DNA of 64,000 nucleotides from Bugula neritina (lineage: Eukaryota; Animalia; Bryozoa), in NCBI GenBank assembly GCA_964035545.1, contig OZ037769.1, positions 13,236,633 through 13,300,632 on the forward strand, given 5' to 3'. The notes beneath the pieces are model-generated. The model searched no databases and was not told the origin of the DNA. It was given only the letters and a program-made list of their open reading frames with translations. Positions 1,015 through 63,887 of the stretch are shown piece by piece (the first letter of the stretch is position 1; the number at the start of each line of letters is the position of its first letter). The translations under genes and the position numbers were made by a program.

Positions 1015-4000
1015 GGGAGATGCCGTGATCAGTTCGCACATGCTCTCTCAGTGTTTCCAGCTCTGCGTGCTGATTGGTGCATAGCCAACAAGGATAGTCC
1101 AATGCAACTCTTTCTTCTGGACTGCCATTTGATTCTAAAAATAACAATTTTAAATATTATATATTACTCTACACATATGCAGTGCTGCCTCCGTATCTCA
1201 CCAAGTTCCGGGCTTAAAATCTTAATTCGTGACATAGTAGAATACCATATTTAACTTTTCAGGTCCATTACATTCGGCCATTTTGTCCCTATACACATAC
1301 ATGGGCCACAAACCATGGTCTATGAAGTTTTGTAATAAATAGAACCGTGAGATACAGAGGGAATGCTGTATTACTCTAAACATAATATATCATTCTAAAC
1401 ATCCATTACTTGGTACTTCAAATCAACAGAAGTAAAAAAAATATTTATTGGGTAGCTCATGGGTTTGCATTTGTATTATTAAATAACTCATTAGTTGCCT
1501 GAAATATTAAATTAACCACTCGTCATGTATTAAACAGTGAAGTAATAATTTTACTAGTACGAAATGCTGGTAGAGCCAGGAGAAAAAGATAGAAAATGGA
1601 AAATATAAGCTGAGATATTTAATATTTGAATCATCATCAATACTTCAAATGCCCTTCCCAGAAAGTCACGTCAGTTCAAATCAAACGCAGCTATGAAGAG
1701 TATGTGAAGCAGAAGAGATGATGACACACTAGATAACCGGCATCATGACACAAATATTGTCAGCTGGTAGGAAATACTTCAGAGAAAAGTCATTTCATGT
1801 GATTTTCAAATTTGGCCTATTTCATTACAAAAGTTTTATATACTTTAGTACTATGTAACAGTATTATATATTATGCTGGCTTCATGTATTATATTAGTTT
1901 TATATATTATTATATTATACCATACTAGCATTAAATATCATGGTATAATAGTTTTATATATTATGCCAATATATATTCTGATAGCAAAACGCCGGAATTT
2001 CATTTCGGTAAAAAATACTTAATTTATAGCTTTTCAATATCAGAGTTTGGCTTTTATAATTATTAACCTGGTTATACATTGTACTGGTGTTGCATTAACC
2101 TGGTTATACATTGTACTGGTGTTATATTAACCTGGTTATACATTGTGCTGGTGTTATATTAACCTGGTTATACAGTGTGCTGGTGTTATATTAACCTGGT
2201 TATACATTGTACTGGTGTTGCATTAACCTGGTTATACAGTGTGCTGTGTTATATTAACCTGGTTATACAGTGTGCTGGTGTTATATTAACCTGGTTATGG
2301 GTCATTTTACTTAATTTAGCACACACTGGAAATCTCCAGTTTTTAGCTATTTTTTTTATAATTTAGCTGCTAATGAACATGGATTTTTGCCCAAAACTAG
2401 TAAAATATCAATAAATACACCTAAATAATCAAGGTTCTTTTTAAATTTGCTTGATTTCCAATGTTTTTTCCTATTTATTTAGCTTTAGATTGGAGACCGT
2501 TACGGTGTACTGGTGTTATACAGAATTCTGGCGTTATACAGTGTTCTGTAATATTAACCTGCAGAGAAGTGAGGGGGGCAGGTCAGGACCCCCAACCTGT
2601 GCAGTGAGGTGACACAAGCTTGGCACGGATCCCAAAGTACCATCACATCTCAAATCAAAGCAGATTAAACGCTTACAATTACACAACGACATTTACATAT
2701 TTTTTGTCATTTGCTTGAGCTAAATGGCTTATTTTTGAAGTAAATGTCCATCAATAGGTCAAAGAACTAAGGCAAGACACAAAGACAGTAGGAGTGATTC
2801 ACTGCGAGCTTTGTGTACAGTTCTATACATCTGGCCCAGCAAACAATGCTAGTTTAATTAATTGTTTCAGAGTACAGAATAAATACATATTAACAGAAAA
2901 TAATGACTGTTAATAAGTGATCATGTTGACCTTGAGGAAGGTGAGGGTTCCAGAACACTAAATGATGTAATCAAGGATAGGGCAGAACGTATTGTGACAT
3001 TTGATTGAGGTAAAAATAATAATCCACTGAAACTGCACACAGTAACACAGCAGCGTTTACTAGATATTATGGGTGCATGTAGCATTTCATTTGTATTTAT
3101 AGCAGTTTAACCGTGTCCTTAACAAAACCAAGAAGAAATACCACAACCAGTTTTTGTGAAATAGAAATCAAGTTGCCGATGATAACATACCAAGTAGGCA
3201 AATTATTATTTAAATATTTCTGGTTTAATAGAAGAAAAGAAAATTTGAGAACATAAATCTGCTTCAATAAGACTAGTTTATTCAAACATACAGTCCTCAT
3301 TGACTTTTACTTTCTTTTACTACTCTTTTTTAAAGCTCCAAGCATACAACAAAGTTGAACCACAAGTTCTGGTACTAGAGAACCTGGCAGGCTGAATGGT
3401 GGAGCAACTAATTTTAGTCGCGGACTGCATGAAAAACTATAGTCGGGATAGATTGAAGGATGTGTTTGTGGAAAATGAGATTCCAGTGAACATGCTGTGT
3501 TTCATGCAATTAGCTATACTTAGATGCAATAGCAATACATTTTATGTATAAAACATTTCAAAGAGAGGAATCTGTGGACTTTGTACTAGTTTTGAGGAGA
3601 CACATATCAACATAATAAAAGTGGAAAATATCATCCTTTAAATGCTTCTAAAGAGGTTCTTGCGAATTTAACTAATGACAGTTTTGAAAACTCAAAGAAG
3701 CAGAAGGTAGTGTAGTGTTGAGATTACCCAGTAGCCTCTGTAGCGCAATGGTTAGCACGATGGCTTGCGAGCCGGAGGTCTGCGGTTCGAGTCCCAATGG
3801 GAGAAATTATTTTACAGTTAGGTTACCAAATGCTTGGAAAAAAGATGAGCAAGCAATGTATCATGTAAGTAATACCCGGTGAAGGGCGTACAAGCATAGC
3901 CTAAGGGTAGGCAGAGTATAGTCTAAGAGTATACATACCTAAAGACATTGAAGAGGAAAAGAGAAAGGGCCTCTGCAACTTCTTGTTCATACTCAGGTCC

Positions 4001-7000
4001 ATTACGTCCTCACTATTACTATATGACTCTGAATCTACAGTATATACAGTGCAAGTACATAGAATATATACAGTGTAAGTACATATAATATATACAGTGC
4101 AAGTACATAGAATATATACAGTGTAAGTACATAGAATATATACAGTGTAAGTATATATAATGTATACAGTGTAAGTATATAGAATATATACAGTGCAAGT
4201 ACATAGAATATATACAGTGTAAGTATATAGAATATATACAGTGTGAGTACGTAGAATATATACAGTATAAGTATATAGAATATATACAGTGCAAGTACAT
4301 ATAATATATACAGTGTAAGTACATAGAATATATACAGTGTAAGTATATAGAATATATACAGTGTAAGTATATAGAATATATACAGTGTAAGTATATAGAA
4401 TATATACAGTGTAAGTACATATAATATACACAGTGTAAGTATATAGAATATACACAATGTAAGTATATAAAATATATACAGTGTAAGTATATAGAATATA
4501 TACAGTGTAAGTACATAGAATATATACAGTGTAAGTATATATAATGTATACAGTGTAAGTATATAGAATATATAAACATTACATGCAGGTATATGTTACG
4601 CTGCCCTATTACATTACATGCTGTCCATTGTACAGAAAGGTATGATATGGCCTACTAAATTATAGATCTGCTATCAAATTCAATGCATTGAAATGTAACC
4701 CATGAGCCTAAGGAGTAGCGCAGTTGAAACTATGCCAAACACGCCGCCATTTTGTTTTATAGTAGCACCCAACAAACTACTGGGAATTGAGTTTAGATTT
4801 GGGCAGATTACTGGCAGGCACAACCTTCAACAAATAAATTCCAACAATTAGGAAGTCACATTTTTTCCAACTTTCACTCCGCTCATCAAAACAATCCCAA
4901 AAAGCAAAACATAGTCTCCTATACTAATGAGAATTGGAGGTACATGCTGCGGTTGAATTAGGGTAAGTTTTGGAGCCTGAAAGCAGGCTGGTGGTCAGTG
5001 GGGTGAGGGTGGTGTAACAAGGATGATCAAGGATACAGTGCCACATCCTGATAGAAATGAGCAAAACTTCATGGGAAATTTACTGGACAAATATGTGTCA
5101 TTTTCATGTGTCTTAGGCCATAGTGAGATGGCAAGATGACACAAGCGCTTCTTATCTGACACTGGGAAATATAAAAGTTCTATATTTTGGAGTTGTCCTC
5201 AACGAAAGGGTGTGGCAACGTATGCCTCTGAGAAATCATTCAAAGGATGTGATGTCATAACTTAGCAACACAGCAGCTACCAGTAGATAGAGATATGTCA
5301 TTTAGGAGCCTGGTGTAGGTGTTAACACTGCTATGGGTGGCAGCACCCAATAAAACTCTACAAGTAGAAAAGCTATGTTTGTTTAATATCAATTATTTTC
5401 ACTAAGAACTGTAGTACTACCTGGTCCAGAAGTGACTCGCCCGCTGCCGGCATCGGCTGACCCTGTAGCGGTAGTGGAGGTGGTAACAGCCTCATTGTTG
5501 GGCGTTTCAGAGGTATTTTTGTTCTCATCAACATTCAGATGACCTTCAGCAGGCGCCAGTAGACTCTTGCTTTCAATATGAGGCGTGACCTTTTCACTCC
5601 AGACCTGCATAGCAAGAGGAGATATGATACTAAATATATGAGAGAATGGGTTGAGGCATGTGGAGAGCTGGTTTCGCTTATGTTGGGAAAACAATATTGA
5701 AATATTAATATTCTATTGAGCAGTTCATATTTCACAGCTAGACAGTTTTGGCTGAAGATTTGGTACAAAAAGCAATAATTCTGCTGCAGAAAGCTATATT
5801 TAGGAGCCGGTTTTGGCCATTAATTATTCTGTTATTTTGCCTTGTAGCCTGTAATTAGGTTGACAGCTAAAAGCCCCAAAACTGATAGATCCAGGCAAGG
5901 GAAGGGACTACACAGGCAGATCAATCCATTGACCTCTAAGTTGCTGGCATAATGTGGCTATAAATAACAGAGTTTACTAAACAAATCCCTGAAAGTCATA
6001 ACTGAGTTAGATGATGTAACACAAATATAGTTTAATAAACATGGGCTAAGCTTTCGGTTGATGCCAGCTTTAGTCTTTGTTCTAACCCAGCAGTTCTCTA
6101 GAAGAATTGTCAGCAGACAAAGTAACCCTACTAAATTCAGGCAGCATGACCAGAACACCGTGAAATACACAGTACGAACACAACATTGTGTAGGCTAACA
6201 CACAGCATGGACACAACAGTGTGGAACTGTGTTTCGAAAGTTCTAGAGAATAAGCGGATCAACACCGTTGCTGTGCCACTGCCAAATTTGTGCAAAAAAC
6301 CGGCAGGCGTCGGCATTATCCAAATGTTTCCAAAGAATCACTGGTTACCAAAGTCGAGCTAACAGGTAGGAAGCTGTAAATTAAGCCAGTGGTTCTCCAC
6401 CATTCTCTACTCGGCAACCAAATTCTAGTTAGGAGCAACTTTGGGTTGTGAACCAACCTTGTGATAGTCCATGTGGAGGTCCAAAGACTCTTGACTAAGA
6501 AACTTGAGGCAGCAGATAAAACATCTTAACACATCTGAGTCTACATTTACTGAGTTCTCATCAACCATCTCATTAATATCATCTTCGCTGACGCTGCAGC
6601 CAATAGGAGCGTGGAAGTCTCGAAAATGACAAACCAGCTCATCCTGTGTAACACATAGCAGAAATTTATAATAGATATATAGCAGACACAGTATACGACA
6701 TTAATTTAAATTTCAAATGAGGGATGCTTTAATTTTGTGAAAAATAATTATTAAAATATATTTAGCTACAGCATCTGCTTAAAGCACTTGAATTTAGTCA
6801 TAATACAAACAAATTATACACAAAATAATCAACACCCAGCTACCTGCCATCGCCCATGCTATTTTCATTTACTGGCATATTAGAGAAATATCAGAATATT
6901 ATGTGATTTCAAATGCTGATTGAATGTTTAAAGCGTAAAAGAAACGAAATCCCACCATTTCATATTTATTGACCGAATATTTTGGAAAAGAGACTAAATG

Positions 7001-22000: not shown

Positions 22001-25000
22001 AGTGCTCCATGGTGTCCTATAGTGTCATACATTATTCCATAATGTCACACAGTTCCCCACAGTGTCATATAGTGTCTTACAGTGCAACATAGTATCATGT
22101 AGTGTCACACAGTTCCCCACAGTGTCATATAGTGTCACACAGTGCAACATGGTGTCATGTAGTGTCGCACAGTGCTGCAGTGCATAGTGTCATGTAGTGT
22201 CACGCAGTGCAACAACGTGTCATATAGTGTCACACAATGCAACATAGTATCATGTAGTGTCATACAGTGCCATATGGTGTCATATAGTGTCACACAGTGC
22301 CCCACAGTGTCATGTAGTGTCGCACAGTGCTGCATAGTTGCATGTAGTGTCACACAGTACTCTATATAGTGTCCAAAAGTGTCACACAGTGCCCCATACA
22401 CAGTTACACTGAGTCTATAATAAGGGTTATACAGTGCCTGACATTTGGACGTTAGGTTACCCTACCGCACATGTTCTTTACAGCATTAGACAGTGGCCAC
22501 AGTCTAGGACCCAGTCTAGGACACAGTTTATGTTAAAGTAAATTAATCTAGGGCATTTACTCTTTTGGTACATATCAGTAATGTAATCTTTTGTGAAATA
22601 TAAGAGATGAAGAAAACCAGGGCAATGGCTTGAGCTTTGAAAGTTATTTTAGGAAATAGCACTGCAGTTTTATTATATTAGTATATTGCATAATTTAGTA
22701 GTAAGATTTGAATGCACTAAGGAGTTACCTACTCTATTCTATTGCGAAACCATCTATAGAAGTGTTCAATTACTACCCACTAAGAAAATGCCCTTTATCA
22801 GATTTATGTAAGCATATCTAAGCATCCATAAATTCCTTGGCAAAAGACGGTGCTAGCTTGGTTCCCATAGCATATGCTAAGCAGTGTTCCCATAGCAAAC
22901 ACAAGGGGGGAATAAATTTAACAGCCAACGAGCAGCCCATTTCCTGTATACTGAAGGTGATCGGCCAGGTGATACCCCACCAGCCAGTTATGATAGACTC
23001 AGAAACTTAGAGCTAGAAAGAGAAGTAGTGGCTGGCCAGGGAACAGGCCTAAACACAGGCGGTTAGATATAGGATGATTCAGAATTCTTTAATTGATTGA
23101 ATTTTATTAATGTTTACTGAAAACTAACCTGTTTCAGGTCAGAATTCTTATGTCAAATGTTTTTTATTTACTTGTTTGTTGGGAGATGATGAATAGCATA
23201 AAATATACCCTATAACTATGGTATTGGCCAGCCAACTCGGGAACATTCTAGAATGTCTGCTCAGACTACTAAAGCCAATTTTATAACTCCGAATTCAATT
23301 AGCTGCTCCCAGCCCTAGCCTTTCAATGCACTCAACTGCAGATGAAAACTTGCAATGAGAGGAGTTTTAAGGCAGTGAGGCTAATATTTATATTAGCTAT
23401 TCAAATGTTAGCCTCAGTTCGTTCTCTGACATTTAAATTAATAGTATTTTACTGTCTAGCACGTTTATTGTAAAGACTTATGTAATCACGCAGAAGGTAT
23501 GCATGCTTGAATTGTTAGAAGGCATTGATTAAAGGCCCTTTATTACATACAAGTCTTTATAGCAATACAACATTGATTTTTAGGCCTCAATCAAAATATA
23601 AATCCATTGGGATCCTGTATCAGACTAGAGATATAAGTGACCCATAAACTTGAACCCTATGCTTTATCATCACCTACAACTCGTTAAGGAAAAGGAACTT
23701 GATGATGGAAAAGGGCACGGAATGTCAATAATTTTATTTAGCTTCTAGGCAGGCTGACCAAAAACCAACACTTAACGGGTAATAAGCATACAGACCCGAA
23801 TTAGTTGAACACAGGGAACAAGGCTAATTTGTTAGATAATGGCTAATAGAGTTGCGGTGGTACTGCACAACCCCAAAAACAGGGCAGCCCCTTAGGTGAT
23901 GGTCGAATAAGAAACAATGACTACCCACTTCCTTCTCAAGTGACAACAAAACCCAGCCTTTGTTTAGTCCTAACATTGTTACTAACAGGGCTTTAGATTA
24001 TGCAGGTTGGGAGATGAGCCAATGGGGCTGTAGATCAGATTGTGTACTGTATCAAAGGCCAACTAATTACTTATGCATACATTTCAATTGGGGAAGCAAA
24101 TATCTAAACAGCCCCATGCAAGTGAAATGATGAGAATAAATTGTGGGAGAGTTAATTAAAAACAAATAAGGGATGGTAGTTGGATGGTAGCTGGGAGAGA
24201 GCTGTATTTAGGTGAGAGACTATTCAGCTACGACAATAACAACAAAACCGCCACTGGGCTTCAAACAGCTTTAAATGGCGGTCGTATCAACCAGAAAACC
24301 AGCTATGCTAAGCTGACCAATTAAACAACTGACCATGATTCAAGGCAAAGCGTACTGCACACAGAGCCAGGAGCCAATAATACGAGTTGTGCAGTGGGAA
24401 TTAATAGCTGCAGGCTGCATTAGCTGGGCAGATACGTGCAGATGATTAGGGTATTGAATAGCGTGCAGCTAGCTATTGAAGGCCCACACGAGGGTATATA
24501 ACTTTCAACTATTACACAACAGTACAGTAATGATAGCTGCCAATAGCATATTCCTCCTTCTAGTTACGTCTAACTAGTTCGTATGCAGCAGACTAGCTAG
24601 TCGAGAAAAAATGTCACGAAATGACCTAAAGTCAAAAATGTTGAACTTCTGCAAATTAAATGATGACTAAAGGCAACTTGAATTCGATAGCTTTTCAGTA
24701 ACACAATTCTGTTGCTATATTCAGTGTGTAAACCCTTGGAATTAGAGACGAAATATTTCACAACAAATTTTATATTTTAACAAATGGGGGACCAGGAACA
24801 TAGTGTGTTAAGTTGTTAGACAGTCAGTAGACATGAGCCATGTCTAAACAACCCAAGGGTTTATCACAAAGTCAAACTTTATAGCCTGTGTAAAGAAGGC
24901 ATAATAATACTAAATTTTCTTGAATCAAACTTGAAATAGACAAGTTTTCCAATACAAGGGAGCACTTTTCAAGACTCATTTATCAGATATTAAGAGTTTT

Positions 25001-32120: not shown

Positions 32121-33271
32121 ATTGCTGCGTTATATTGCATAACAATGAGATTAGGAAATCCCTGCATCACCGTACATGTAGAAGACTAGTTGAAATGGCG
32201 ATCCAAAACTATCAGCGAATCACTATTAGTTTTACTGCTAAACTCAGTACGAGTAGTAGAGCCTAGAGAGTTTACTGTATAAAGCTGAAGGTCGAAGTTC
32301 AAAGTTAAAAATTATACCATTTAAATATGACTGAATGGGGGAACCTTTTCAACTCATGAAAGAGATTTCCCTAACTTTTGGTCCAAAAAACGCCACGAAA
32401 ATTTATTAAGACTAAGCATGATAGCTTTTCAATTTCTCAACTACACATGCACTGAGTGCAACTTGAAACACGTGCAATTGTTTACTGCGCAAAAACTGAC
32501 CAATGGCTAAAGGTTAATGCGTAATCAATTAGACATTACGTGAATTTACGTAACATCAAGGAAATCGTGTATATTCGTGTGTATACAACTCCAAATTAGA
32601 TAGAACGAAGTCCCAAAATCAAATTTATTTTTTCAACTAACGTTTCATTTCCAGTACATGCAAATACATAGTTACTATTAATTGTCAAAGTAACTGCCCC
32701 ATAGAGGTAACAATGGCATGCGATAACGTATATAAGTAAAATACGTCATGATACAAATCATGAAGTTTAAGTTTAAAAAATTTCATCACCCGAACCAAAA
32801 CTAAAAAAGCTACACTCCAACATTGAAATATATAGAACATAGTAATTGGTTTTTAAAAAAAATCCTCATAAAAATGAAATTAACTACAGTTTCCTGTAAT
32901 ATCTTTACAGTTATGTACACAAATATTTGATTAGCAAAGAAGTAAAAGTACTTAAGCAGTCAGTATGTAGTGTTGAGGTAACCAACCCCACATATTTACA
33001 TATATCTTTAAGGGCTAGCAACTCCATTAAAAATAGATATACGAGACACATTTTATTTGTTTACTACTTTATTAATCAAAGCAAATTAATATTTTGGACA
33101 CTACTTTATCCATCTTCGGAGTTATACATTCATTGTTTCATGTATTATTTTAAAGATGAACTCAGTGGTGTCCAAAATATTAGTTTACTTTGATAAATAA
33201 AGCGGTAATCAAATATAATATTTCTCGTACATTTATTCCTAATATTTACATATAGGCTTAGCTGTTGAATA

Positions 33272-36200
33272 TTAAACGCTTGGGGCTGGTGTTGGAGTAT
33301 TGGTTGGTGAGGCAGTAGGAGGCGCCGCTGTAGGAGGTGACGGTGTAGGAGGTGACGCTGTAGGAGGTGACGGTGTTGACCGAGATTGAATCTTAGACAG
33401 ATAGGGCTGCAGTCGACTTTGTATATCCTGCAGACACTGGTGGAGGTCGATGAGTTGCAGGTGATGCGCCATGGTCGCCCCGACAATCACGGTGACTATG
33501 AGTATGAGCACGATATCCTTGGCGGTGATTTGGTCAAGGAATCCCTTCGGCTCAACAGGCTTAGGGGGTTGGAGAGACTTTGGCACAACTACTGAAAGCA
33601 GCTGAGATTTCTTCACCTGCTGAAAGAAAGAATTGCCATAGAAAGAAAGAATTGTCATGCTATGAGATGTACAGAGTTGTCTACCCATTAAACTCTTCAT
33701 AGTATTAAACTAGATCACTAGGAGTTGTCTAATCATTAATAAACCTTTATCATCCGGAGTTGTGTACTCATGTAGATTATATTGGTAATATGAGGCAAGC
33801 TCATTGTGCTTTTAGTAATGCAACAACACAAATCAAACTTGCCATCCCAAAAGCAGATTTATACAACTTATTGTCTATGCGATTATTAAAATACTGGTTA
33901 TCCACTTCAAACTATTTATCATGGTAGATAGTGAAACTCTACTAACAAAAAATACATTATAATTGTACCACCATGATAAATAACACGACTACACTATATA
34001 CATTATGATATATAGCACTACTATATTATATTCATTATGATATATAACACTACTATACTATATACATCATGATATATAAGATTACTATACTATATACATT
34101 ATGATATATAAGATTACTATACTATATACATTATGATATATGATGACTGACTTTGAGAGAACAGGAAATAGCAATAAGTTAAGTTTATCAACTCTCAATG
34201 ACCAGGCATGGACATGTTGTAGAAGAGGTCGATAAAACACATGTTTTGTGGTTGCTAGGCACTCTAAGGACCTACAGGTAGGCAGGTGTGAGGGTAAATA
34301 GAAGAATAAGTACCTTAACAGACGCAGTAGCATCACCACCTGCGTATTTATCCACAATGGCTGAAACATTTTCTACAGTCCTGGTGATAGAGGAGGAGGG
34401 AACATTTTCTACAGTCCTAGTGATAGAGTTAGCGGTAACCGTGGTAACGACACCTGACCTTCGGGCTGAAGAGCGCAAAGGAATTATTGGCTCTCTCTCT
34501 TCTACCTCTCTCTTGACCTGAATAGACAAATAAGATTTTTTTTCAAAGGATTTGAAACAACAGATAGAAAACATTTACAAGGAAATGTAAACACCAACAA
34601 CAATAGATGATACAGAAACAATTGCAGTGCACATCAGCTGAGCTAACAACTATAGTGTCAGATAAAACGTTACTGTCGGTTTAATATATAGCTGTCTCAA
34701 AACGAATACAAATTCAACAGCAATGCACTTTACCCTAAGTTGACCTCAAATTAAGCTCAAGTTGACTCTAAGTTCACATCAAGTCAACCCTAAGTTGACC
34801 TCAAATTCATTTTAACCGACGGGCTCATCATGCATCAGAAAGGGAAACTGCTACTAGAAAATCAGACAGGAAGTAGCGTAACAACCAACTGTTCGAGATC
34901 GGGATCGACTCCTAGATCGCGCAGGACTCCTGTTGGGTGTTTTAGATCGACCTTTCTTTGCAGGAGACTTGCTCGCGGCTCGCGACCTTGACACAGATCG
35001 ACGTGACCTTGAAACTGAACGCCGCCTTGCCGGAACCTTCTTTTCAATTTCTTTGGGGGATTTCTGCACTTCTCTGGTGGGAGTCTTGGACCTGGTAGAC
35101 TTTCGACCCGGGGACCTTTTCTGCAACAAGTTCAGGAGGTGTAAGCAACAACGAGCTGACAGAGCGAGGCAGGGGCAGGGATTACCGAGCTGTATACTAG
35201 ATGAGAAGACAACTCCACCAACCAGCCTTCCAAAGCACAGCTATTGTAAATGTTGAGATTTTAAAAAAAATACAATCAGCCTTTGACAGGCAAAATGCAT
35301 ACAAGACTATTTAAATGAGGCTGTAAGCTTCTTTACGCTGACTTGCAGTGAGATTGCTGACTCTGTAGATGTTAATAACTGACCTCTTCAAACTTGGCTA
35401 TCTCGTTGGCACAGTTGTGTAGGTTAGCCTCTGGCTCCCAGCTGTGCTCAGAGCTGTCATAGCCCTTCCACTGGACGAGGTACTCTGTAGTGTTACCTCT
35501 TCTTCTTTTCTTTAATAGTCTGTCAACCTAATCAAGCAACCACAACCGTATCATATACCAGCACTCGTTATCATATAAATACACAATTATATCATATATA
35601 GACAGAAATATGTCCTATAAATATATTCCGTATCACATTAATAAACAATTATATTATATAAAGGCACATTATTATCATATGATTACCAAATTGAACCTCT
35701 AGTTATTGATTGACCTATAGTCATTACAATTTCTTATTTTTAATTGATGAATCAAATGATTTTTAAGTTTAGAACATAACACTAAGTTTACATCTAACAT
35801 GATTGAGAAGGATAGATCAAAAGGTGCAAGTATTTGTATTAGAATTGATATAATAGTAGCCACTAGTAAAATACCCTTACTAAGTTAATTGTTGAAAATT
35901 ATCACCCTGTAAATAAAAATAGGCTATACATCAGGCACCTACTCACACAAGTTTACCAACGGAGATTATAGTTGCCATCCCTGTGAGAAACCCCTGATGG
36001 AAGAGGTTTTTGTTTAATCGGGCTAAGGGCTAATTTAGATGGGGCACAGGAGCAAATGCATCTGGGCACTTACTGCTACCACAATAATATTATCTAGAAC
36101 CTTAATAGCTATAAGCTATAGCCTATATGAATGTAATAATTTGTGATAAATTTTTTGGCACTTTTAGCATTACTACACTGCCATCATAATCATCTGTATC

Positions 36201-37127
36201 TGTATTTGTGTTGAGTCTCTAGAGGAGACCTTCACGGAGGAGTGTTATGAAGGCATGACTTCAGAGATTTTAAGGTCTCTGATTGTCCCGGGAAGGACAA
36301 TCAGTATCACTATCACTATGATTATGATTTAACTTTCAAGAATAAATTCCCTTTAAGCTTCAACATATTCATAACCAATAACTTAACATTAAGTCAAAAA
36401 CTTTAACTTGAAGTAAGTTCAAAAAATAAACTAAAAGGTGTAACGAATAATTCATAATTGTCACTATAACTATAACCTATACTTATAGTTACAAGTATAA
36501 GTATAGCTCTTACGGTTACTATTACATTTACTATTAGTATTAGTATTACTATTACTATTAGTATTAGACTTGGAGTTATTACTATAACTATTACTATAAG
36601 TACTATAAGTATTAGTATAAGTATTGCTATTACTATTACTATTAGTATAACTAGTATACTATAAGTATTACTATTAGTATTACTATTACTACTGTCACAC
36701 TGAGTGACTGTCTATTAGTATTACTATTAGTATTAGTATTACTATAAGTATTATTACTTAAATACTAGTATTAATTAGTTACTAGAGTCTTGGAGTTGGA
36801 GTTACTGTTAGACTTAGAGTTCAGTTACACTTAGACTTACTGTTAGTGTTACAATTACTGTTAGACTTAGGTTAGACTTACTCTTAGTCATAGTGTAAGT
36901 CACTGTCACTCTGTCAGTGTGAGTGTTCCGGTTCGTGCTACACTTACTGATTATGAATATGTCTAATTCAAAGTGTTCTCAAGATGTAAACGCGAATTAA
37001 TAAACAATACGAAAAGATTAAACTTTATGAAATAAATTAACTGAATATATTGTCTTACACTTTGTTTCAATAATAGTAAAGTATACTATTTTACCTCAAA
37101 AATTACATCACTCTCAGAGCCCGCCAT
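33272..37127 (-). CDS. Chromodomain + RS-rich + single-pass transmembrane protein (319 aa), putative inner nuclear membrane chromatin tether
   Basis: Five phase-0 exons: 37095-37127 (MAGSESDVIFE), 35384-35527 (VDRLLKKRRRGNTTEYLVQWKGYDSSEHSWEPEANLHNCANEIAKFEE, canonical chromodomain), 34890-35120 (RS/SP-rich), 34314-34517, 33272-33619 (NAGNAG acceptor; hydrophobic IVLILIVTVIVGATMA, then a P/T/S-rich tail). Total 960 nt. Confidence 0.85.
33985..34142. repeat. About 30-bp AT-rich minisatellite
   Basis: TACTATACTATATACATTATGATATATAAGAT units. Confidence 0.85.
35941..36070 (-). mobile_element. SINE family A copy (5'-truncated)
   Basis: CCATCCCTGTGAGAAACCCCTGATGGAAG ... GGGCTAAGG ... GGGGCACAGGAGCAA. 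Confidence 0.7.
36455..36925. repeat. TAT/TAC/TAG hexamer-type low-complexity tract in the first intron of the chromodomain gene
   Basis: TATTAG, TATTAC, TATAAG and TTAGAC runs. Confidence 0.8.
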
Positions 37128-37390
37128 TCTATTTAAATAGAGTAAAAAGGAAACAGTTGTGGTTGGTTATAAAATTTCCGCTGCCACATATAAACGTAGA
37201 ACCTTCGTAATAGTGCCAGGAAGCATCAGTTAGCAATTACATTGGCTTAGAGTCTATTGCTAACCGCGCCCTCTCTCCGTTGGACCGCCAGTTTAAAGCA
37301 CTTTCACTTTGTTGCGGTTTACAATAATTGATGGCAGCGAGTTTAGTTGTGTGGCGATTGCTTTCAGTTTAACTTTTAGCACCCAGTAAA
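37128..37390. promoter_or_regulatory. Putative bidirectional promoter for the chromodomain gene and SHMT
   Basis: Short CpG-containing patch with a CCAAT box (ATTGG near 37241) between divergent genes, flanked by AT-rich low-complexity tracts. The SHMT ATG is directly preceded by a splice acceptor (CTGCAG|ATG), implying an upstream exon. Confidence 0.5.
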
Positions 37391-38607
37391 TTTATTAGTC
37401 TTTAAAATTTAAACATAAATATTAGCTAAATTGAAATGGCAATGCCAATTGAAAGCAATTTTAATTTATAACTGCATTTAACTGTTTTATATCAACAAAT
37501 TCAAATTGGGATTGGAAAAAAATTCAGCAAATTGAAATGCAAATCAAAATGAAAATGAAGCAAATTTAATTTAATTTAGTTTGTTTTTAAATTTTTATTT
37601 AATAATTATGATATTTCAATTTTTTACATTTACAATTACCTGTAGCTATTATTTATAAAACAAAGTACGAGAATAATTTGAAATATAGCTGTAACTATAA
37701 GTGTAACTAAAGCCAAAAGTATATTAATATTATAATAATAATTACTATTACTAATAATTTAAATAATAAATTATAATTATTAATTATAATTATGAGTTAT
37801 GACTACTGATTAGCATTGTCACTATTAATATTATTCATTTATTGTGATTATAATTGATTCATTTTAATCATGGTTATCATAATTATTATGTGGTCGTCAT
37901 CATTTTGTTTATCATATTCATTATGATTGTGGTGACCATAATTGAGTTCAGATACTCATACTCGCCCTGATTATTATGATAACAATGACTATGAGCATGA
38001 TAACTCATTAAGTATTATATTTATTTTTAAAGTAGAGGTAATAAAAGTTGGTTATCCATGATTTGCTTTGCTCTATGATTTTATATTTCTATAATATTAA
38101 TTAGAAAAACCTCAGCTTTATTATTATATTGGTAATAACATGCTGGTAATTGCTTCTTTGGAGCTTTTATGTTGAACATTAAGCAGCATGTAACATCTCT
38201 ACACTCTGCTTATAGTAAGTAAAACTAAAAGGCTGTTAGTGTTACTCCACTATTTACTGCTACTTGCACTTTTAATATTTCACTTATAGTTCTATTTAGG
38301 CTTTTTTACAATTCACATACAAACATAGTTTACTTAATTGAATTTACTCATGCTTATAGAAAATACTAAATAAGAAACTTTTCCATTAGGTTAAGTTTAT
38401 TGTGTTGTATTTACAATGCCTATCTTTTGAAGACAGATAATCTTGACTCATTAAATTGGGTATTTTGAAACTTGGGTTAGTGTTTTCAATAATGTCCAAT
38501 AATTCTTGCAGCAAGTCATTTTTAAAAACTATCATAAAAAGGGACCAAATAGGTTGCCGTTCGTTCACTGGTTGGCTAAATTATTACATAATTTTGAAAA
38601 TCTGCAG

Positions 38608-41600
38608 ATGGCATCTGGAGGGTGTGATCTACAGGGTAGCGTGCAAGATGTTGACCCTGAAATAGCTGAACTCATCAAGTTGGAAAAGCAAAGGCAGGTC
38701 CGGGGTTTAGAGCTGATAGCGTCAGAAAATTTCACCAGTCAGGCGGTTTTGGACTGTCTAGGCTCCTGTTTCACTAACAGATACAGCGAGGGCTACCCAG
38801 GACGGAGGTATATAGACAGTAATCTCTTCTAGTAGGACTAAGTTTGTCGTAGTTTGTCCTCTAGCACTGTGTGAATACCAGGTCATCCTACCATACTCTG
38901 CAGTAAAACAGCTTGCTCACACTTATTCTTTAGGAAAAAATAGCTGCTAGTCTCTAAACCATGCCTTTGCAGTTCTGATGTAATATTTTTATTTTCTATT
39001 GTTAATTTATCTTATACAGACTGTTTTTAGCCAACTTTTGTTGATATTCTAAAAAGCTCATATGAATTACTTGTTTCAGTAATATAGTCTGTTGTGTGCA
39101 GGTATTATGGCGGACAAGTATATGTGGATAAACTTGAACTGCTGTGTCAGCAAAGAGCCTTAGCTGCTTTTGGCCTGGACTCAGCCAAGTGGGGGGTAAA
39201 TGTGCAGCCCTACTCTGGTTCCCCAGCCAACTTTGCAGTTTTCACGGCTATTGTGGAACCTCATGGTGAGAGCTTGTAACTTTTTATATGAAAATGAAAG
39301 CCCATTCCCTATTAAGCAGCAGTGTTTGACTCTAAAGGACACATACATTTACCGACCATAGTAGCATTCTACTGCCACACGGCAGAAGCTCAACATTTTT
39401 TGTAGCACTTCCTCTATAACTCTTCTGATATTTTCTGTCAAGTCATCTCAATCATGTTTCCATTGAATTTTAATTTACTGTGAAGTTTTATTTGAATCTG
39501 AAGTCCTGTTGTGTGTCACAATTATTGCATGGTTGAATTGTAATATATCTTGTTCGGTGACATGCCAGAATGCAATCCTGCCTCTTCAACTCTGCTTTGT
39601 CATCAAAATAAACCCTCCATCACTCATTGTCAAAGTATTGTTTATTGGAAGTCATTCCTACTGTATATTATATTATATATGTTATAATACATGTCATGTC
39701 ATCATAAATATGATATATTATCATACATATTACATATAAGTGATTCTGTCCAATTCCAATGTGACGTCTTTAGGAGTGAAAAGCAGCATTTAAGCAGTAT
39801 TGATGAGAATTTGTTTGTTGTCATCAACATAAGGGCTAGGCAGGGAAAATACGTTGAACGAATAGTTCACAGTAACAGATTTGGCAGTGCATATGCACTG
39901 GGCATAGCTTATTTAATGAAAAGAAATTGCAGCTTGAATATGCACGTTCAGTGAGTTGAGACTGTCAGGTGCATACCTACGGTAACTTACCTTTATTTAC
40001 AGTTAACTTTGTGTAGTACAAATACTTGACGCATACTTACTATACTTACACTGTATTATATGCATGTGACATACTTACTATACTTATACTACATCATATA
40101 CATGTGATATACTTACTATACTTACCTGTAAATGTGACATACTTTCTATAATTACAGGTCGTATCATGGGACTGGATTTACCTGACGGAGGTCACCTGAC
40201 TCACGGCTTCATGACCACCACTAAGAAGATATCAGCCACCTCGGTGTTCTTTGAGTCGTGTCCGTACAAGGTCAACCCCGATACGGGACTCATAGACTAC
40301 GATCAGCTGCTCTACACTGCCAGGGTCTTCAAACCCAAACTCATTATTGCTGGTCAGTTGAGATTTGTGTCTGTAGAATGTAGATATCAGCTTAGTAACC
40401 TAAACTTTCATAGGCTCAGTTCTTGGGCTTCAGATGGTAATTGTTGTTCTTAGCGATTTTCTTGACAAGATGGTTCATAATTACCTTGTATGTCGGACAT
40501 CATTGCTGTGTTCATTCTGATAGACCAGCTCACTTATTTCTATCTAGTTTAGTGTCAACTTCATAAATGCTGTTTTTGTATGTAAGTACCAGCGCCTTGT
40601 TTTATTTAGGAGCAGTAGTAGAGAAATTGAGATAGCCTAAGTTCTTCAACATTTTTATCAACTTTTGGTTTGGGATGCGGCTTGAAATTCTTGCAAGAAC
40701 TCAACTTCTTTTGCTACATTTCTAATCTAGAACACAGGCTTTTTTCAATTTCTCCATTACTGCACCTACCTCTTTGTTTCATTTTCCAGGCATGTCCTGC
40801 TACCCCCGCAACTTGGACTACGACAGATTCAGGGCTATTGCTGACGAAGTTGGAGCTCTCCTATTGGCTGATATGGCACATGTCAGCGGGTTGGTCGCTG
40901 CCAATGTTGTGAACAACCCGTTTGATGTGTGCGACATTGTCACCACGACAACGCACAAGTCTTTGAGGGGGCCACGTTCAGGCATGATCTTTTATAGAAA
41001 AGGTAAGTTAATCTGTCAAGTAAGAAGTGACACTCTAAAACAGTACGTTCTGTGTGACATGCTAGCTATTGTAAACAGCTGGAGCAGGGATTAGGGAGTG
41101 GCATGGCACAGATTTTCAACTTTCATTTCCCAGGCATGCAGGAAGCACCTGACAAGCACCTGACAAGCACCAGCCTGCTCTATGCCGTGCATGTACCGTG
41201 TGTAAGATATGTTGGTAGGTTACATGCACCCCAGGTCATGGTTCACATGTTTATCTATATCTGTTATCATCTTGGAAGTGCAATGTGTACATTAGAGCAG
41301 TGGTAAAACTGTATTACTAAATGTTAGATAACTCCAGTGACCAAAGTCCAACTAATGCATCTATTATTAGCCCAACCTGTTTAGTGCTATGATACAGACA
41401 TGCCAACCTGTTCAGTGCTATAGTACAGACATGCCAACCTGTTTAGTGATATAATACAGACATGCCAACCTGTTTAGTGATATAATACAGACATCAATAA
41501 TAAAGGGAAATGAGGAAGTGGCACTTCGTGTTACATACTTTTGGTTTGGGCAAATCATTTATTTCTGTATAAGTGTTGTCAACCATAACAAATAAGCTAG

Positions 41601-44600
41601 AAAGTGACTAGTTGAATTATACACTGTAGGCAAATAGTGTAAGTAGATAATTCAGTAGTAGATAAGTCAATAAGCAAGAGTAAGTCTCATCAATTGTAAA
41701 TTGCCACAGTGCTGATGAAAATTGTGTATAAAGGAATTCGAATGCAGCCTACTGGGATATAGGTTATTGTCACTTTAGATGATTTCAGTGATATGCTACA
41801 TGTTCCAAGAATCCTGCTGTAGTCAACAACTGGCAATGAGCAACTGGCAATTAGCAATTCTCCACCTCCTAACTTGTCTCCACAACAATAAATAGTGATA
41901 TTCAGTCATTTGCAGTCAGTTTCACAGCATTCACATGTCCCTCAATTAGCTAAAACAATTGCAGTGCAGAAAAAGTAAAACTTAGACATATATGTGGCTT
42001 AAATTTCTCCAATGGTAAACTTGTTTCATACAGAGTTAAACGACTTCAAAGGTTTTGTTTTGATTTTCATTCCAAATAGTAATTGAAGTTAGACAATAAT
42101 AGTGGAATTCAAATTAGAGATCTAAGTATTTCCATATTTTAATACAATTTCAATAAAAATCAAATTATTTTATTATTTATTTATTTAATTATTTTTCTCT
42201 CCGCAGTTATTTTGCTCTGCGTTGTATGGAATGAAACAGGGTTGCAATAGTAGTCTAAGTTATACACTTTGCAGGTTGATTCAATGGCTTGTTTTTGGGG
42301 GGTTAAACATATACTCCAACATTTTAGCTCTAATCACAATGATGTCTGTTTACTCAGGGGTTCGGTCTGTAGACAAGAATGGTAAAGAGATCATGTACAA
42401 TCTGGAAAACCCGATTAATGAGGCGGTATTTCCCGGACTTCAAGGTGGGCCACACATGCACCAAATAGCCGGTAAGTCATCAGTCAACCAGTGAGAATAT
42501 TTTTAGTTTCACACTAATTGATTGGTTTGAGTTTTTAATTTCATAGCCTTCTGCGTCAATCTGTACCTCAAATATTAAAATTTCTAGGTCACTGAAAGTC
42601 TATGAAAGAATTGCCATATGTGGCACTATTCATTTGACTAAATTATGCCTATATACTGTCACAAGAATTGATCGAAATTTGAAGTTATTGTTTATAATAC
42701 TAATTAATTTATTGGAATAACTAAAACAGTTTTAAAAAAATTCAAATTCTTCTAAAGTGAGTTAAAATGAACAAACACCAACAACTTATGTGCAACTTAA
42801 TTCCTACACATTACGGAAATTCTGCAGGTATTGCGGTAGCATTAAAGCAAGCCCAGTCTCCAGAATTTAAGACTTACGCACAGACAGTGGTGGACAACGC
42901 CAAAGCCTTTGGGGAGGCTTTGAAGAACTTTGGCTATACTGTAGTTACAGGTACAACTTCATGTTTAGATTTAACTTTACTAACCTGGTTTCAAATGATA
43001 TAGAAAATAGTTCCAAGATTCTTGCAAAAGTACTAAATGTTTGGTAAAATAACGTTCACCGAAGTCAGTTGTGATGGTTTGCTGGTTATTTTAAAAACTG
43101 TTATAGGATATATTCTGCTTGTAGCTGAAAGTTGATATAAACTTTAAATCATATTGAGTAGTTAACATTTTGATTTATGTTTTGGCAGTTTTATAGCAAA
43201 TGAAGAAATTTCAACTATGAAATACATGCTGTCAGCAGGTTTAGGTTGGATAATGATTGTTGACAATAGTTATTCAATAATTTTAGAAAAAAAAAGTTGA
43301 GAATATTTTCTCTGATTTGAAAATTTTATGAATAGTTAATCTGGACCAAGTGTGAAGGTCACCAATAACTTGATTTAAATAGTGCACAAACCTTCTCAGC
43401 GCATATTTGGGGCCGTAAATATAACAATCTTCAACCAGGTGTACAAATGTCACTCTTGTGTTTAGGAGGTACCGACACTCATCTCCTGTTAGTCAACTTT
43501 AAGCCTCTCAAGTTGACCGGATCTAAGGTCGAATACACACTGGAGCAGATTTCAATAACAGCGAATAAGAACACGTGTCCGGGGGATAAATCCGCCCTGA
43601 ACCCCTCCGGTGTTAGACTCGGCACTCCTGCATTGACCTCTAGAGGCTTTACTGCATCAGACTTTCACAAAGTCGCAGAGTTCATGCACAAAGGTGAGCA
43701 GAAAATATAAAGTCATTTTGTTGAGTCAGTATAGAAGCTGGTGTAGCTTATGAATTGTGTTGGTGAGTTTCAGAGGTAACTTGACAGATTTATGACCCGA
43801 TCTAAGGGTGCCATCATACTGCATTCGACATGACAACTTGTATCTTCTAACTTGGCTGTAATGACCAGGTTTATAGTCACTATCCTTGTCAGAACCCCTG
43901 GTGGAATGGTTTTTTTAAAGTAAGCTAAGGACTTATTCATATGTGGCACAGGAGCACTTATGACTGGTTGCTTTTCCTAACATCACCAATTTCCGCTACC
44001 ATAAGTTCAGGTTTACTAAGCTAGCACTCTTACCCCTAGACCACCCTCTTACCCCTAGACCACAGCTGCTCCCAATGGCTAGCCTTGATGTAGTCACTAA
44101 GAGTGGTCATCTGCAGAAAATAAGGAAAACTAGCTATTTAGCTGAACAGATGCTCTATTACGTTACTGCAAGTTACAGCAGTTACTCTGTTCAACCAAAT
44201 ATGTAGCAGTTCCAAACCTCTGGGGGTTTGTTTTACAAGCTCTGTAGTTTCTAATGGTGAACCAGATGTAACATGATTAGTGGTGGAATATAGACCATGA
44301 ATATTGATACTCTTTTTCTTACTTATGTAAACTTGAAAGTAATATTGTGACTGCAGGTTAAATATAGTCTTCTAGGCTTAGTGCCTAATATTATACATTC
44401 ACTTGGGTGATACATGGTGGTAGGGTGAAGTTTTATCAATGTTGCAATGAGTTTAATGATAATATGAAGATCCTGGTAAGTTTAGGATACAATCATATTT
44501 TCTGCGCCTTCTACATCCTTTCGTGTGTACCTTTTGTACCCTTTCCCTTTTGTAGGATGCAAATACTCTACAAATCGTTTTATCTACTACATGATAAAAC

Positions 44601-45892: not shown

Positions 45893-54803
<8,911 letters not shown>

Positions 54804-61594: not shown

Positions 61595-62134
61595 TTAAAT
61601 TTTAACAGGATAAGAAGCTTGTTCAAAAATAAAAGGTAAGTCTACAATTTCCAGTTCTTTATTTAAAAAATTACTATATTTTTGATTAATGTAATTAAAT
61701 ATAAAAGCATCATTTGCGTATGTATCACAACAATCATTTATTAAAGATATAATGTGTTCTAGTGAGAAACCTCTGGCTAAATGCGTTAACACAAAAATAC
61801 AGTATTGTCCGCAAACTGTAGAAAATACAGATTGTAGCTGAGTGCTACTAAATTGCCAAGAGTCTACTGAATCAAATATAGCCGCAACCTCTGGCATGTT
61901 GTAAAGACCACTTCCAAAAGAGTCAAAATAAACTCCTGTGTTATTTTCTGTCTTTAGAAACATCACCCAGTGCTCTCCCGGATGATTGTGAGGTTTAGTG
62001 TTTACAACTCCACAGCAAGGATAATCCGTCAAACTACTACTAGGTATTCTATCGATTGGAAATACACCGATGAAGTTCATCTTTTTCACCCACTCATCGT
62101 TCTCAAGAATGGAATATATTTCTTTAGAATTCAT
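61595..62134 (-). CDS. Polinton adenain-like cysteine maturation protease (PRO)
   Basis: Catalytic motifs PGEHW, YFDSFG, QLQS and TVCGQYC are all intact; the ATG at 62134 overlaps the capsid stop codon (TGATG). Confidence 0.92.
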   Translation of the reverse strand: MNSKEIYSILENDEWVKKMNFIGVFPIDRIPSSSLTDYPCCGVVNTKPHNHPGEHWVMFLKTENNTGVYFDSFGSGLYNMPEVAAIFDSVDSWQFSSTQLQSVFSTVCGQYCIFVLTHLARGFSLEHIISLINDCCDTYANDAFIFNYINQKYSNFLNKELEIVDLPFIFEQASYPVKI

Positions 62135-63444
62135 CACGCGTAGAAATTTGTAAGTACCGCTCTATTCTTATCAATTTTTATACCAGAGTCAAATTCGGAG
62201 TAGACAATCACATTAACGGGTGTGTCAAGAGCCTGAGAAAACTTTAGCTCTAATCTTATTGTTCCTCGCTTCATCAAATGAAAGCAAGTGCTCAAATCTA
62301 GGTCAGGAGTTAAATCAAAGGCCATTAGACTGTAACCTTTCTCGTATTCCTCTCTATCTATATCTATTCCGCCATTGTTGAACACCTTTCCCGTTGATTC
62401 CAAGAGCGTAAAATAGTTTCTTAGAGTATTATGATTTGTGTAGTCTGAAACCAATGCCTTCTGAGGTACTTGTTTCCCGTCAACGACTAGGTTTGTATAT
62501 TTTAAATGTTTGTGCTGAAAGTTGAAAGGATTCAAATTGTACGCGCCTTCGAATGCACCAGCGTTTACAATACCTATAACTATCCTCTTAGGCAGAATAC
62601 CGTGAAATAAATTTTCTTCGTTCCAAGACAGTGAACCCAATGCGATATTGAATGACTTCATATCAACTCTTCTGATAGGATAAACGGCTGGTAATAGTTT
62701 CTTGTCTAAATTTTCAATGTGCTTTAATTGTATTCCGCTATTGATTTTAACTTTTCGAAGGAAAAAAGATGCGTTTAGGATTTTTAGTTTGCAAGTAGAG
62801 TTTTCACCAGCCATTAGCACTAAGCTGTTGTGATTCCTCACAAATTTTAATTTCATGTCTACTCCGTTTAAAATGAATCGCCTTTGAAAGAATATGTCAG
62901 CGTGCGGTCTAACAATTAATTGCACAGTTTTACTCTGCCCCGTAATTCGCCTTCTAGCTTCCAAGCCTTCATTATCACCACCAATGTGATCCATTTTTCC
63001 GGGTGTATCCTTTGAGTAGAGTGACATTGATAGTTGTGACTTTTTAGCTTCATCGGAGTAACTTAGTAAAGTTTCTATAAGAGCTCTGTAGTGGTAGAGA
63101 TTAGAAGCGTTGGAAATAACTACATCATTTAGCATAATTTCTACTTGTTGAAATAATGTGTGACCCAAAAGGTTTATAGGAGCCGCATCACCTTGAGCAT
63201 CGAGATCCGTACCGTCAGCTTTTGTTATTTTCACCTCTAATAATAGATAGCTTGAACTGAGGTCAAGGTAGTTGTTCGAATCACCAGAGATTGAGAACTT
63301 TATAGGTCCCTCATCATTCAATGAGGTTGTGGGCATATGTTCTACGTGATATCCTTCTTCGATTGATGCTTGAGTAGGTAGTGTAGAAAATAAATCTAAT
63401 TCGGGTTTGCCAGCGAGGCAGCTATGTTCCATTATGAAACTCAT
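62134..63444 (-). CDS. Polinton major capsid protein (PY, double jelly-roll), 436 aa
   Basis: Typical PY motifs ELDLF..PTQ.SI, YLDLSSSYL, LFQQVEI.LN, YHYRA.IETLLSY, PHADIFFQ, LPKRIVIG, NPFNF, GYSL.AFDLTPD, G.IRLELKF. Confidence 0.92.
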   Translation of the reverse strand: MSFIMEHSCLAGKPELDLFSTLPTQASIEEGYHVEHMPTTSLNDEGPIKFSISGDSNNYLDLSSSYLLLEVKITKADGTDLDAQGDAAPINLLGHTLFQQVEIMLNDVVISNASNLYHYRALIETLLSYSDEAKKSQLSMSLYSKDTPGKMDHIGGDNEGLEARRRITGQSKTVQLIVRPHADIFFQRRFILNGVDMKLKFVRNHNSLVLMAGENSTCKLKILNASFFLRKVKINSGIQLKHIENLDKKLLPAVYPIRRVDMKSFNIALGSLSWNEENLFHGILPKRIVIGIVNAGAFEGAYNLNPFNFQHKHLKYTNLVVDGKQVPQKALVSDYTNHNTLRNYFTLLESTGKVFNNGGIDIDREEYEKGYSLMAFDLTPDLDLSTCFHLMKRGTIRLELKFSQALDTPVNVIVYSEFDSGIKIDKNRAVLTNFYA

Positions 63445-63455
63445 AGTATAGTATT

Positions 63456-63887
63456 CTATGAAAAGATATCACGTTTAGTAACCCTACGTCTTTTCACCTT
63501 TGAAGACTTGGAAGAAGTAACTCTGTTAGTCTGACGCTTCCTTTTTTTATTTCGATTTCTGTTGGTGACGTATGTAATACCTTTAGTAATAACCTCTCCA
63601 GCCGCGCTGTTGACGTTATCTTTAATTGACTCTCTGAATGGTTTACCGGATAAACTATCTCTGGCAATGTTTAGACCAGTATTTATTGCTGTCTTTCCTA
63701 AACTTTTTACACCTTGTTTTACAACAGGCAATGCTGCTTTGAGTATGTTACCAAATATGCTCCCTAAACCGTATCCTGTTTGATATTTTTCTCCTGAAAA
63801 TATTGGAATCATTCCATTTCCTGATTGTTCATATAACTGTCTATAGCTATTTGATGCGGCATCACAATCGAATGGAATTATTCTCAT
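63456..63887 (-). CDS. Polinton PW-type core/membrane-lytic protein, 143 aa
   Basis: Q.G.G motifs (QSGNG, QTGYGLG), then an amphipathic helix GLGSIFGNILKAALPVVKQGVKSLGK and a K/R-rich C-terminus ending DIFS; located between penton and major capsid. Confidence 0.8.
   Translation of the reverse strand: MRIIPFDCDAASNSYRQLYEQSGNGMIPIFSGEKYQTGYGLGSIFGNILKAALPVVKQGVKSLGKTAINTGLNIARDSLSGKPFRESIKDNVNSAAGEVITKGITYVTNRNRNKKRKRQTNRVTSSKSSKVKRRRVTKRDIFS

What the first reader, a model, noticed from the sequence alone, without database searches (positions are those of the whole stretch)
33272..37127. Membrane-anchored chromodomain protein: candidate direct heterochromatin-to-nuclear-envelope tether (LBR-like, with chromo instead of Tudor)
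Seen in the sequence: five clean phase-0 exons encode, in order, an N-terminal chromodomain with the aromatic cage residues in place (F of FEV, W and Y of WKGY); a very basic RS region (RRRSVSRSRRSVSRSR, RSRSRSRSR) with many S/T-P sites (SPGR, TPTR, SPAK, TPNR, SPAR); a linker; one hydrophobic helix after about 240 aa (IVLILIVTVIVGATMA); and a short amphipathic plus PPT-repeat tail. There is no signal peptide. Established knowledge: lamin B receptor uses a Tudor + RS nucleoplasmic head, regulated by SRPK1/CDK1, ahead of its membrane domain; HP1/CDY/MPP8-type chromodomains read H3K9me/H3K27me; C. elegans CEC-4 is a perinuclear chromodomain anchor. Inference: this is a type II inner-nuclear-membrane protein that binds methylated H3 directly without an HP1 bridge and is released by mitotic phosphorylation. 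I do not recognise chromo-RS-single-TM as a named family. The ORF track misses the chromodomain exon entirely.
Basis: partly seen in the sequence, partly recalled or inferred. Interest (0 to 1): 0.85.

Follow-up and report, generated by a model that had tools for sequence, protein, structure and literature searches.

The report
Membrane-anchored chromodomain protein of a bryozoan
A real, conserved gene of the moss animal Bugula joins a reader of silenced-chromatin marks to a membrane anchor in one small protein, a layout I found no description of, which probably pins silent DNA to the nuclear envelope, although where it sits and what it binds are untested.

Summary
Five phase-0 GT-AG exons on the minus strand encode about 319 aa: an intact chromodomain (Pfam E 5e-17; closest to CDYL/MPP8), a basic RS region with five full CDK sites, a disordered linker, one hydrophobic helix at residue 240, an amphipathic helix and a Pro/Thr tail. 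The window is from a close relative of the sequenced Bugula neritina (not human). That genome has a syntenic orthologue, annotated independently with the same five exons (EB796_012711, 308 aa, hypothetical). Between the two, dN/dS is 0.145 (p 4e-13) and all splice sites are kept. No Tudor, sterol-reductase, LEM, KASH, crotonase or chromoshadow domain is present, so it is not LBR, CDY or HP1 by membership. Its layout matches the LBR 1-238 fragment that is enough for inner-nuclear-membrane targeting. Best reading: a single-pass inner-membrane tether that reads methylated H3 directly and lets go in mitosis (about 0.6). Localisation, ligand and junction reads are untested. Spread beyond Bugula is unresolved: one orphan exon in marine metagenomes is a possible orthologue, and my searches could not see LBR-sized relatives.

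The parts
37095..37127 (-). Exon 1: start codon and 11 residues, including the first aromatic cage residue (Phe10)
   Evidence: same exon in L001:10001-10033
35384..35527 (-). Exon 2: body of the chromodomain (cage Trp31, Tyr34), CDYL/MPP8-like
   Evidence: Pfam E 5.2e-17; PDB CDYL E 1e-11; model pLDDT 90, TM-score 0.88 to MPP8 and CDYL; dN/dS 0.125
34890..35120 (-). Exon 3: basic RS region, five full CDK consensus sites, several RxRxxS/T sites; candidate nuclear-targeting, chromatin-binding and phospho-switch region
   Evidence: most constrained large exon, dN/dS 0.061
34314..34517 (-). Exon 4: disordered Ser/Thr/Val-rich linker with a short internal duplication
   Evidence: dN/dS 0.125
34476..34490 (-). 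PxVxL-like pentapeptide (possible HP1 chromoshadow ligand; weak lead, a proline sits inside the motif)
   Evidence: exact PxVxL in the orthologue, PxIxL here
33272..33619 (-). Exon 5 (terminal): juxtamembrane segment, membrane helix, amphipathic helix, tail, stop
   Evidence: dN/dS 0.24
33467..33514 (-). Predicted single transmembrane helix, 16 uncharged residues from residue 240
   Evidence: hydropathy 2.29; helix 236-252 in a low-confidence model of the orthologue; one conservative change in the orthologue
33386..33457 (-). Amphipathic helix after the membrane helix (predicted luminal side)
   Evidence: hydrophobic moment up to 0.47; helix 259-283 in the model; dN/dS 0.17
33275..33382 (-). 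Pro/Ser/Thr repeat tail, faster evolving, ten residues shorter in the orthologue
   Evidence: dN/dS 0.43 and in-frame deletion
33232..33237 (-). Polyadenylation hexamer 35 bases after the stop, kept in the orthologue
37128..37300 (-). Conserved upstream region with a CCAAT box (37245-37241) and a GC-rich element; the gene lies head to head with SHMT

Best explanation
A single-pass (type II) inner-nuclear-membrane protein that tethers silent chromatin directly. SHOWN by sequence: one selected gene with chromodomain, RS region, linker, one hydrophobic helix and tail. INFERRED: (1) the helix is a signal-anchor and the 26 kDa N-terminal part stays on the cytosolic, then nucleoplasmic, side; (2) the protein diffuses from the ER past the pore and is held at the inner membrane by its basic region and by chromatin binding, like the LBR 1-238 fragment; (3) the intact cage binds methyl-lysine in an ARKS context, most likely H3K9me2/3, perhaps also H3K27me3; (4) the unphosphorylated RS region adds DNA/histone binding and self-association, giving the avidity a single CDYL-type chromodomain lacks; (5) CDK1 and SR-protein kinases phosphorylate exon 3 at mitosis and release the tether, helped by H3S10 phosphorylation.
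For: Gene reality and linkage: same five-exon model made independently in B. neritina by AUGUSTUS with transcriptome hints; selection on every exon, wrong-frame controls fail; exons 2-5 have no conserved start of their own and no conserved intron read-through. Cage intact and fold confident. CDK sites and RS dipeptides enriched and all five CDK sites conserved. Helix more hydrophobic than anything in 148 other chromodomain proteins. LBR head plus any one membrane helix is enough for nuclear-envelope targeting, and its helix lies at about the same distance from the start (PMC5617974). In LBR the RS region oligomerises and is switched off by SRPK1 and CDK1. CDYL1b binds H3K9me3 best, needs multimerisation and is displaced by H3S10 phosphate (PMC2787366). 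CEC-4 shows that a perinuclear chromodomain can anchor H3K9me chromatin (PMC4783997).
Against: No localisation, binding or junction-read data. No dedicated topology predictor was available; the helix is short (16 uncharged residues) and its flanking charges are nearly balanced. The full-length structure model is poor (pLDDT 47). No full-length relative outside Bugula was found, so conservation of the layout over long times is not shown. CDY- and MPP8-type domains also bind H3K27me3 and non-histone methyl-lysines (PDB titles).
Confidence: 0.6

Rival explanations
1. Origin rival (compatible with the same function): the gene is a cut-down LBR-type gene of a lophotrochozoan lineage in which a chromodomain stands where vertebrates have Tudor and the sterol-reductase part was lost or split off. 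It would then be a variant of LBR, not an independent invention.
For: Reader domain, RS region, CDK sites and first helix come in the same order and at similar spacing as in LBR. Fly LBR shows that the head and the enzyme activity can change while envelope function is kept (PMC2478713). My searches were blind to proteins longer than 539 aa and showed only 150 of 3470 chromodomain hits. I have an unverified recollection of invertebrate ERG24-type proteins with a chromodomain head; it was not tested.
Against: No ERG4/ERG24 or LBR Tudor match at E up to 10 in the orthologue or its membrane region. None in 29 open frames over 6 kb downstream; no sign of further coding exons there (low sensitivity); stop and polyadenylation signal conserved. 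Four literature searches for such proteins were empty. One survey places LBR only in deuterostomes (PMC5630835).
Confidence: 0.3
2. It is a membrane protein, but not a heterochromatin tether: it reads another methyl-lysine (H3K27me, a lamin, a methyltransferase) or works mainly to recapture chromosomes when the envelope re-forms, or sits in the ER.
For: Closest structures include MPP8 with a DNMT3A peptide and CDYL2 with H3K27me3. The residues flanking the peptide groove are a mix of HP1-like and CDY-like (my reading against known structures). The strong CDK signature fits a mitotic role as well.
Against: The closest characterised domains bind H3K9me3 best. A +27 basic region is typical of nuclear retention.
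Confidence: 0.2
3. The hydrophobic helix is not a membrane span, or exon 5 is not in the main transcript; the product is a soluble nuclear chromo-RS protein whose C-terminal helices serve for dimerisation.
For: Helix is short; no junction reads seen; the annotation is a prediction; no transcript-derived member in the orthologue's cluster.
Against: Hydropathy above all 148 comparison proteins; the segment is uniformly apolar, not amphipathic (moment about 0.1); exon 5 is under selection and cannot start on its own in the orthologue; read-through endings of introns 3 and 4 are not conserved.
Confidence: 0.12
4. A latent reader parked on the ER and set free by proteolysis in or near the membrane, as with SREBP or ATF6.
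For: Type II layout with a nuclear-type N-terminal part; small residues in the distal half of the helix.
Against: No RxxL-type site-1 protease motif is evident in the short luminal part (read); the RS/CDK signature fits a tether better.
Confidence: 0.07

Closest known systems
Lamin B receptor (LBR), in particular the LBR 1-238 fragment
   Same: N-terminal methyl-lysine reader, then RS region with CDK and Akt-type sites, then linker, then a membrane helix at a similar position (LBR 1-238 includes its first helix; here the helix starts at 240); no signal peptide.
   Different: Chromodomain, not Tudor; one helix, not eight; no sterol reductase; no globular second domain detected; no sequence similarity detected beyond composition.
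C. elegans CEC-4
   Same: Chromodomain with intact cage plus a long disordered region; proposed perinuclear H3K9me anchor.
   Different: CEC-4 is described as envelope-associated through a disordered C-terminal part (PMC7111258); the papers read give it no membrane helix. Here there is a predicted membrane span and an RS region. No orthology shown.
CDY family (CDYL1b, CDYL2, CDY1)
   Same: Best chromodomain matches (E 9e-15); domain at the very N-terminus; splice site right after the first cage residue, as described for CDYL1.
   Different: No enoyl-CoA-hydratase-like domain; membrane helix instead; RS region.
MPP8 and HP1
   Same: Same fold and cage (TM-score 0.88-0.89).
   Different: No ankyrin repeats, no chromoshadow domain; both are soluble.
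Emerin and LAP2-beta (from own knowledge)
   Same: Small N-terminal chromatin-binding domain, disordered phospho-regulated linker, single C-terminal membrane helix.
   Different: No LEM domain; those reach chromatin through BAF, not by reading a histone mark.
Bugula neritina EB796_012711 (KAF6028960.1)
   Same: Direct orthologue: syntenic, same exons, about 93% identical.
   Different: Listed only as hypothetical / chromo domain-containing protein; membrane helix and RS region not noted in its names.

Membership tests
Lamin B receptor | N-terminal Tudor domain | tested here: not met
   Chromo found, no LBR Tudor match
Lamin B receptor | RS region with CDK1 and SRPK1/Akt sites after the reader domain | tested here: met
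   LBR description
Lamin B receptor | Multi-pass ERG4/ERG24 sterol-reductase domain | tested here: not met
   one helix only; no Pfam match in protein or downstream frames
Lamin B receptor | Inner nuclear membrane location and lamin binding | not testable with these tools
   needs cell work
Lamin B receptor | Descent from an LBR gene (orthology) | tested here: inconclusive
   searches could not reach LBR-sized relatives
CDY family | N-terminal CDY-type chromodomain with splice site after the first cage residue | tested here: met
   similarity is 45-47%, no tree with CDY sequences was built
CDY family | [quoted passage not shown] | tested here: not met
HP1 family | C-terminal chromoshadow domain | tested here: not met
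LEM-domain membrane proteins | LEM domain | tested here: not met
KASH proteins | Membrane helix followed by a short luminal peptide ending in PPPx | tested here: not met
   no KASH match; tail is 54-64 residues and ends differently
Methyl-lysine-binding chromodomains | Chromo fold with three-residue aromatic cage | tested here: met
CEC-4-like perinuclear H3K9me anchors (functional class) | Binds H3K9me and is needed for peripheral anchoring | not testable with these tools
   needs binding assay and knock-down

The most novel reading that the evidence does not exclude
An undescribed family of integral inner-nuclear-membrane proteins, present in bryozoans and perhaps more widely in lophotrochozoans, that reads H3K9 methylation directly with a CDY-type chromodomain: an independent third solution, beside LBR and CEC-4, to anchoring heterochromatin, and the first with reader and membrane span in one chromodomain protein.
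Probability: 0.35. Interest if true: 0.8.

Novelty: new variant of a known kind. Interest (0 to 1): 0.62.

Why it matters
How H3K9-methylated chromatin is physically held at the nuclear envelope is open outside a few models: CEC-4 has no obvious homologue in mammals and reviews suppose the job is split over several proteins (PMC4783997), and the Tudor-type LBR is reported only from deuterostomes. It is also a compact natural construct for testing whether direct mark-to-membrane tethering alone positions or silences chromatin, for example by rescue of cec-4 worms or LBR/lamin A-deficient cells. Limits: known so far from one genus, with no functional data.

Tried and rejected
For full-length questions I used the database's own annotated orthologue P0037. 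Exon 5 alone: no homologue. P0037 whole: only itself, with the candidate list cut at 8000. P0037 residues 1-62: only 3 candidates. These blanks say little, since they need shared exact words and lengths of 169-539 aa. JGI metagenomes: 15 unrelated chromodomain loci, none matching beyond the domain. Screening 150 chromodomain hits for helix plus RS run: only P0037 has both. Intron 3 read-through ends in a prenylation-like motif and intron 4 read-through in a hydrophobic tail in the window, but neither is kept in the orthologue, so both were rejected. The upstream ATG that would make exon 5 a separate ORF is absent in the orthologue; that ORF is not on record. Downstream sterol-reductase exons: none found. 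KASH, LEM, chromoshadow, crotonase: no match. Single-sequence fold of the whole orthologue was too poor to use. A tree of 40 chromodomains was mostly unresolved. Literature searches for a transmembrane chromodomain protein returned only CEC-4. The CEC-4 primary paper was not held.

Full report
Source. The window is not human. The chromodomain exon found a 94% identical protein, P0037, which is Bugula neritina EB796_012711 / KAF6028960.1, 308 aa, named only hypothetical or chromo domain-containing. Its locus L001 has the same neighbours as the window, SHMT head to head and a zinc-finger gene downstream, and aligns over about 24 kb at 82-92% identity. The window therefore comes from a close relative of the sequenced strain, plausibly one of the cryptic species of B. 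neritina (inference). Following the operators' note I searched the window's model exon by exon by reference and left the joined step out; whole-protein questions used P0037, which a tool returned.

Observation. All are phase 0 and all introns GT-AG in both genomes. Summed lengths give 319 residues. Exon 2 is a complete chromodomain. With exon 1 the three cage aromatics align with those of CDYL; a model from a 40-sequence alignment has pLDDT 90 and superimposes on MPP8, CDY1 and CDYL at TM-score 0.87-0.88. The splice site just after the first cage residue is the arrangement described for CDYL1 (PMC2787366). Exon 3 is strongly basic (net +27 in the orthologue), with RS dipeptides and full CDK sites well above composition shuffles; all five CDK sites are conserved. 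Exon 5 holds a 16-residue uncharged helix from residue 240, an amphipathic helix and a Pro/Thr tail; a polyadenylation hexamer follows the stop in both genomes.

One real gene. Over 308 aligned codons dS is 0.204 and dN 0.030 (ratio 0.145, Fisher p 4e-13). Each exon is below 0.25, the RS exon is at 0.06, the helix at 0.11, and shifted frames of exon 3 give ratios above 1. Net length differences in exons are multiples of 3, while introns carry many gaps. The B. neritina model was made by AUGUSTUS with transcriptome hints (PMC7576161) and joins the same exons. Exon 5 cannot stand alone, because the upstream ATG seen in the window is absent in L001, and the alternative endings from intron read-through are not conserved. 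Junction reads were not available, so linkage is strongly indicated, not shown.

Relatives. Among the 150 best hits in 1.84 billion representatives only two have a single chromodomain: the orthologue and P0139; the rest score by having several domains. P0139/P0151 is an exon read into its intron on short marine-metagenome contigs. It is 58% identical against 37-50% for the others, begins at the same phase-0 acceptor and ends two codons later, and groups only weakly with the Bugula pair (80/68). It may be an orthologue from another animal, but its contigs hold no further exon. Other searches were blank and weak, and none could see proteins of LBR's size. The spread of the layout is therefore unknown.

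Mechanism. With no signal peptide and a 26.5 kDa hydrophilic part before the only hydrophobic helix, established membrane biology predicts a signal-anchor with the N-terminus on the cytosolic/nucleoplasmic side. In LBR, the basic head plus any one helix is enough for envelope targeting by diffusion and retention, and residues 1-238 are the standard reporter (PMC5617974); this protein has the same order and similar spacing. LBR's RS region oligomerises and is switched off by SRPK1 and CDK1 in mitosis. A lone CDYL1b chromodomain binds H3K9me3 at about 2 micromolar, needs multimerisation to stay on heterochromatin and is displaced by H3S10 phosphate; clustering in a membrane through RS regions would supply that avidity. 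CEC-4 is the precedent for a perinuclear chromodomain anchor. I put the direct-tether model at 0.6. Every step after the anatomy is inference. The mark read is uncertain, and a PxVxL-like motif in exon 4 leaves an HP1 contact open.

Comparison and novelty. It works, by inference, like the head-plus-one-helix part of LBR and like CEC-4, but fails membership of LBR (no Tudor, no sterol reductase, none hidden downstream), CDY, HP1, LEM and KASH families. Phrase searches for a transmembrane chromodomain protein returned only CEC-4; the library lacks most subscription journals, so absence is not proven. The main open rival concerns origin: a shortened LBR-type gene with a chromodomain head (0.3), which these tools could not test.

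Noticed in passing
window 38500-44000, + strand: Serine hydroxymethyltransferase gene, head to head with the chromodomain gene about 1.4 kb away; arrangement conserved in L001. A shared cell-cycle-type promoter is possible.
   Followed up: partly
window 61595-63887, - strand: Three intronless ORFs that look to me like a Polinton/adintovirus-type cluster (protease, major capsid, core protein). Only weak support: adenoviral protease E 0.21; no Pfam, PHROG or PDB match for the others. Described only.
   Followed up: partly
window 50017-51975, - strand: Intact 652-aa pogo/Tigger-type DDE transposase ORF (DDE_1, HTH_Tnp_Tc5, HTH_psq).
   Followed up: partly
window 45893-46141, - strand: Last exon of a ubiquitin-conjugating enzyme gene (UQ_con), converging on SHMT.
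   Followed up: partly
L002:1289-1438 and L003:1087-1236: Orphan chromodomain exon from marine metagenomes with near-identical exon borders to exon 2; host animal unknown; candidate orthologue.
   Followed up: partly
window 34854-34889 and 34272-34313, - strand: Read-through into intron 3 ends in a prenylation-like four-residue motif and into intron 4 in a hydrophobic tail; neither is kept in B. neritina, so probably chance.
   Followed up: yes
window 33973-34141, 36400-36900, 3900-4580, 22135-22400: Simple AT-rich tandem repeats in introns 4 and 1 and elsewhere in the window, giving spurious repetitive ORFs.
   Followed up: no
window about 5400-28400, - strand: Scattered exons with Cys/His patterns, matching in position the zinc-finger gene annotated downstream in L001.
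   Followed up: no
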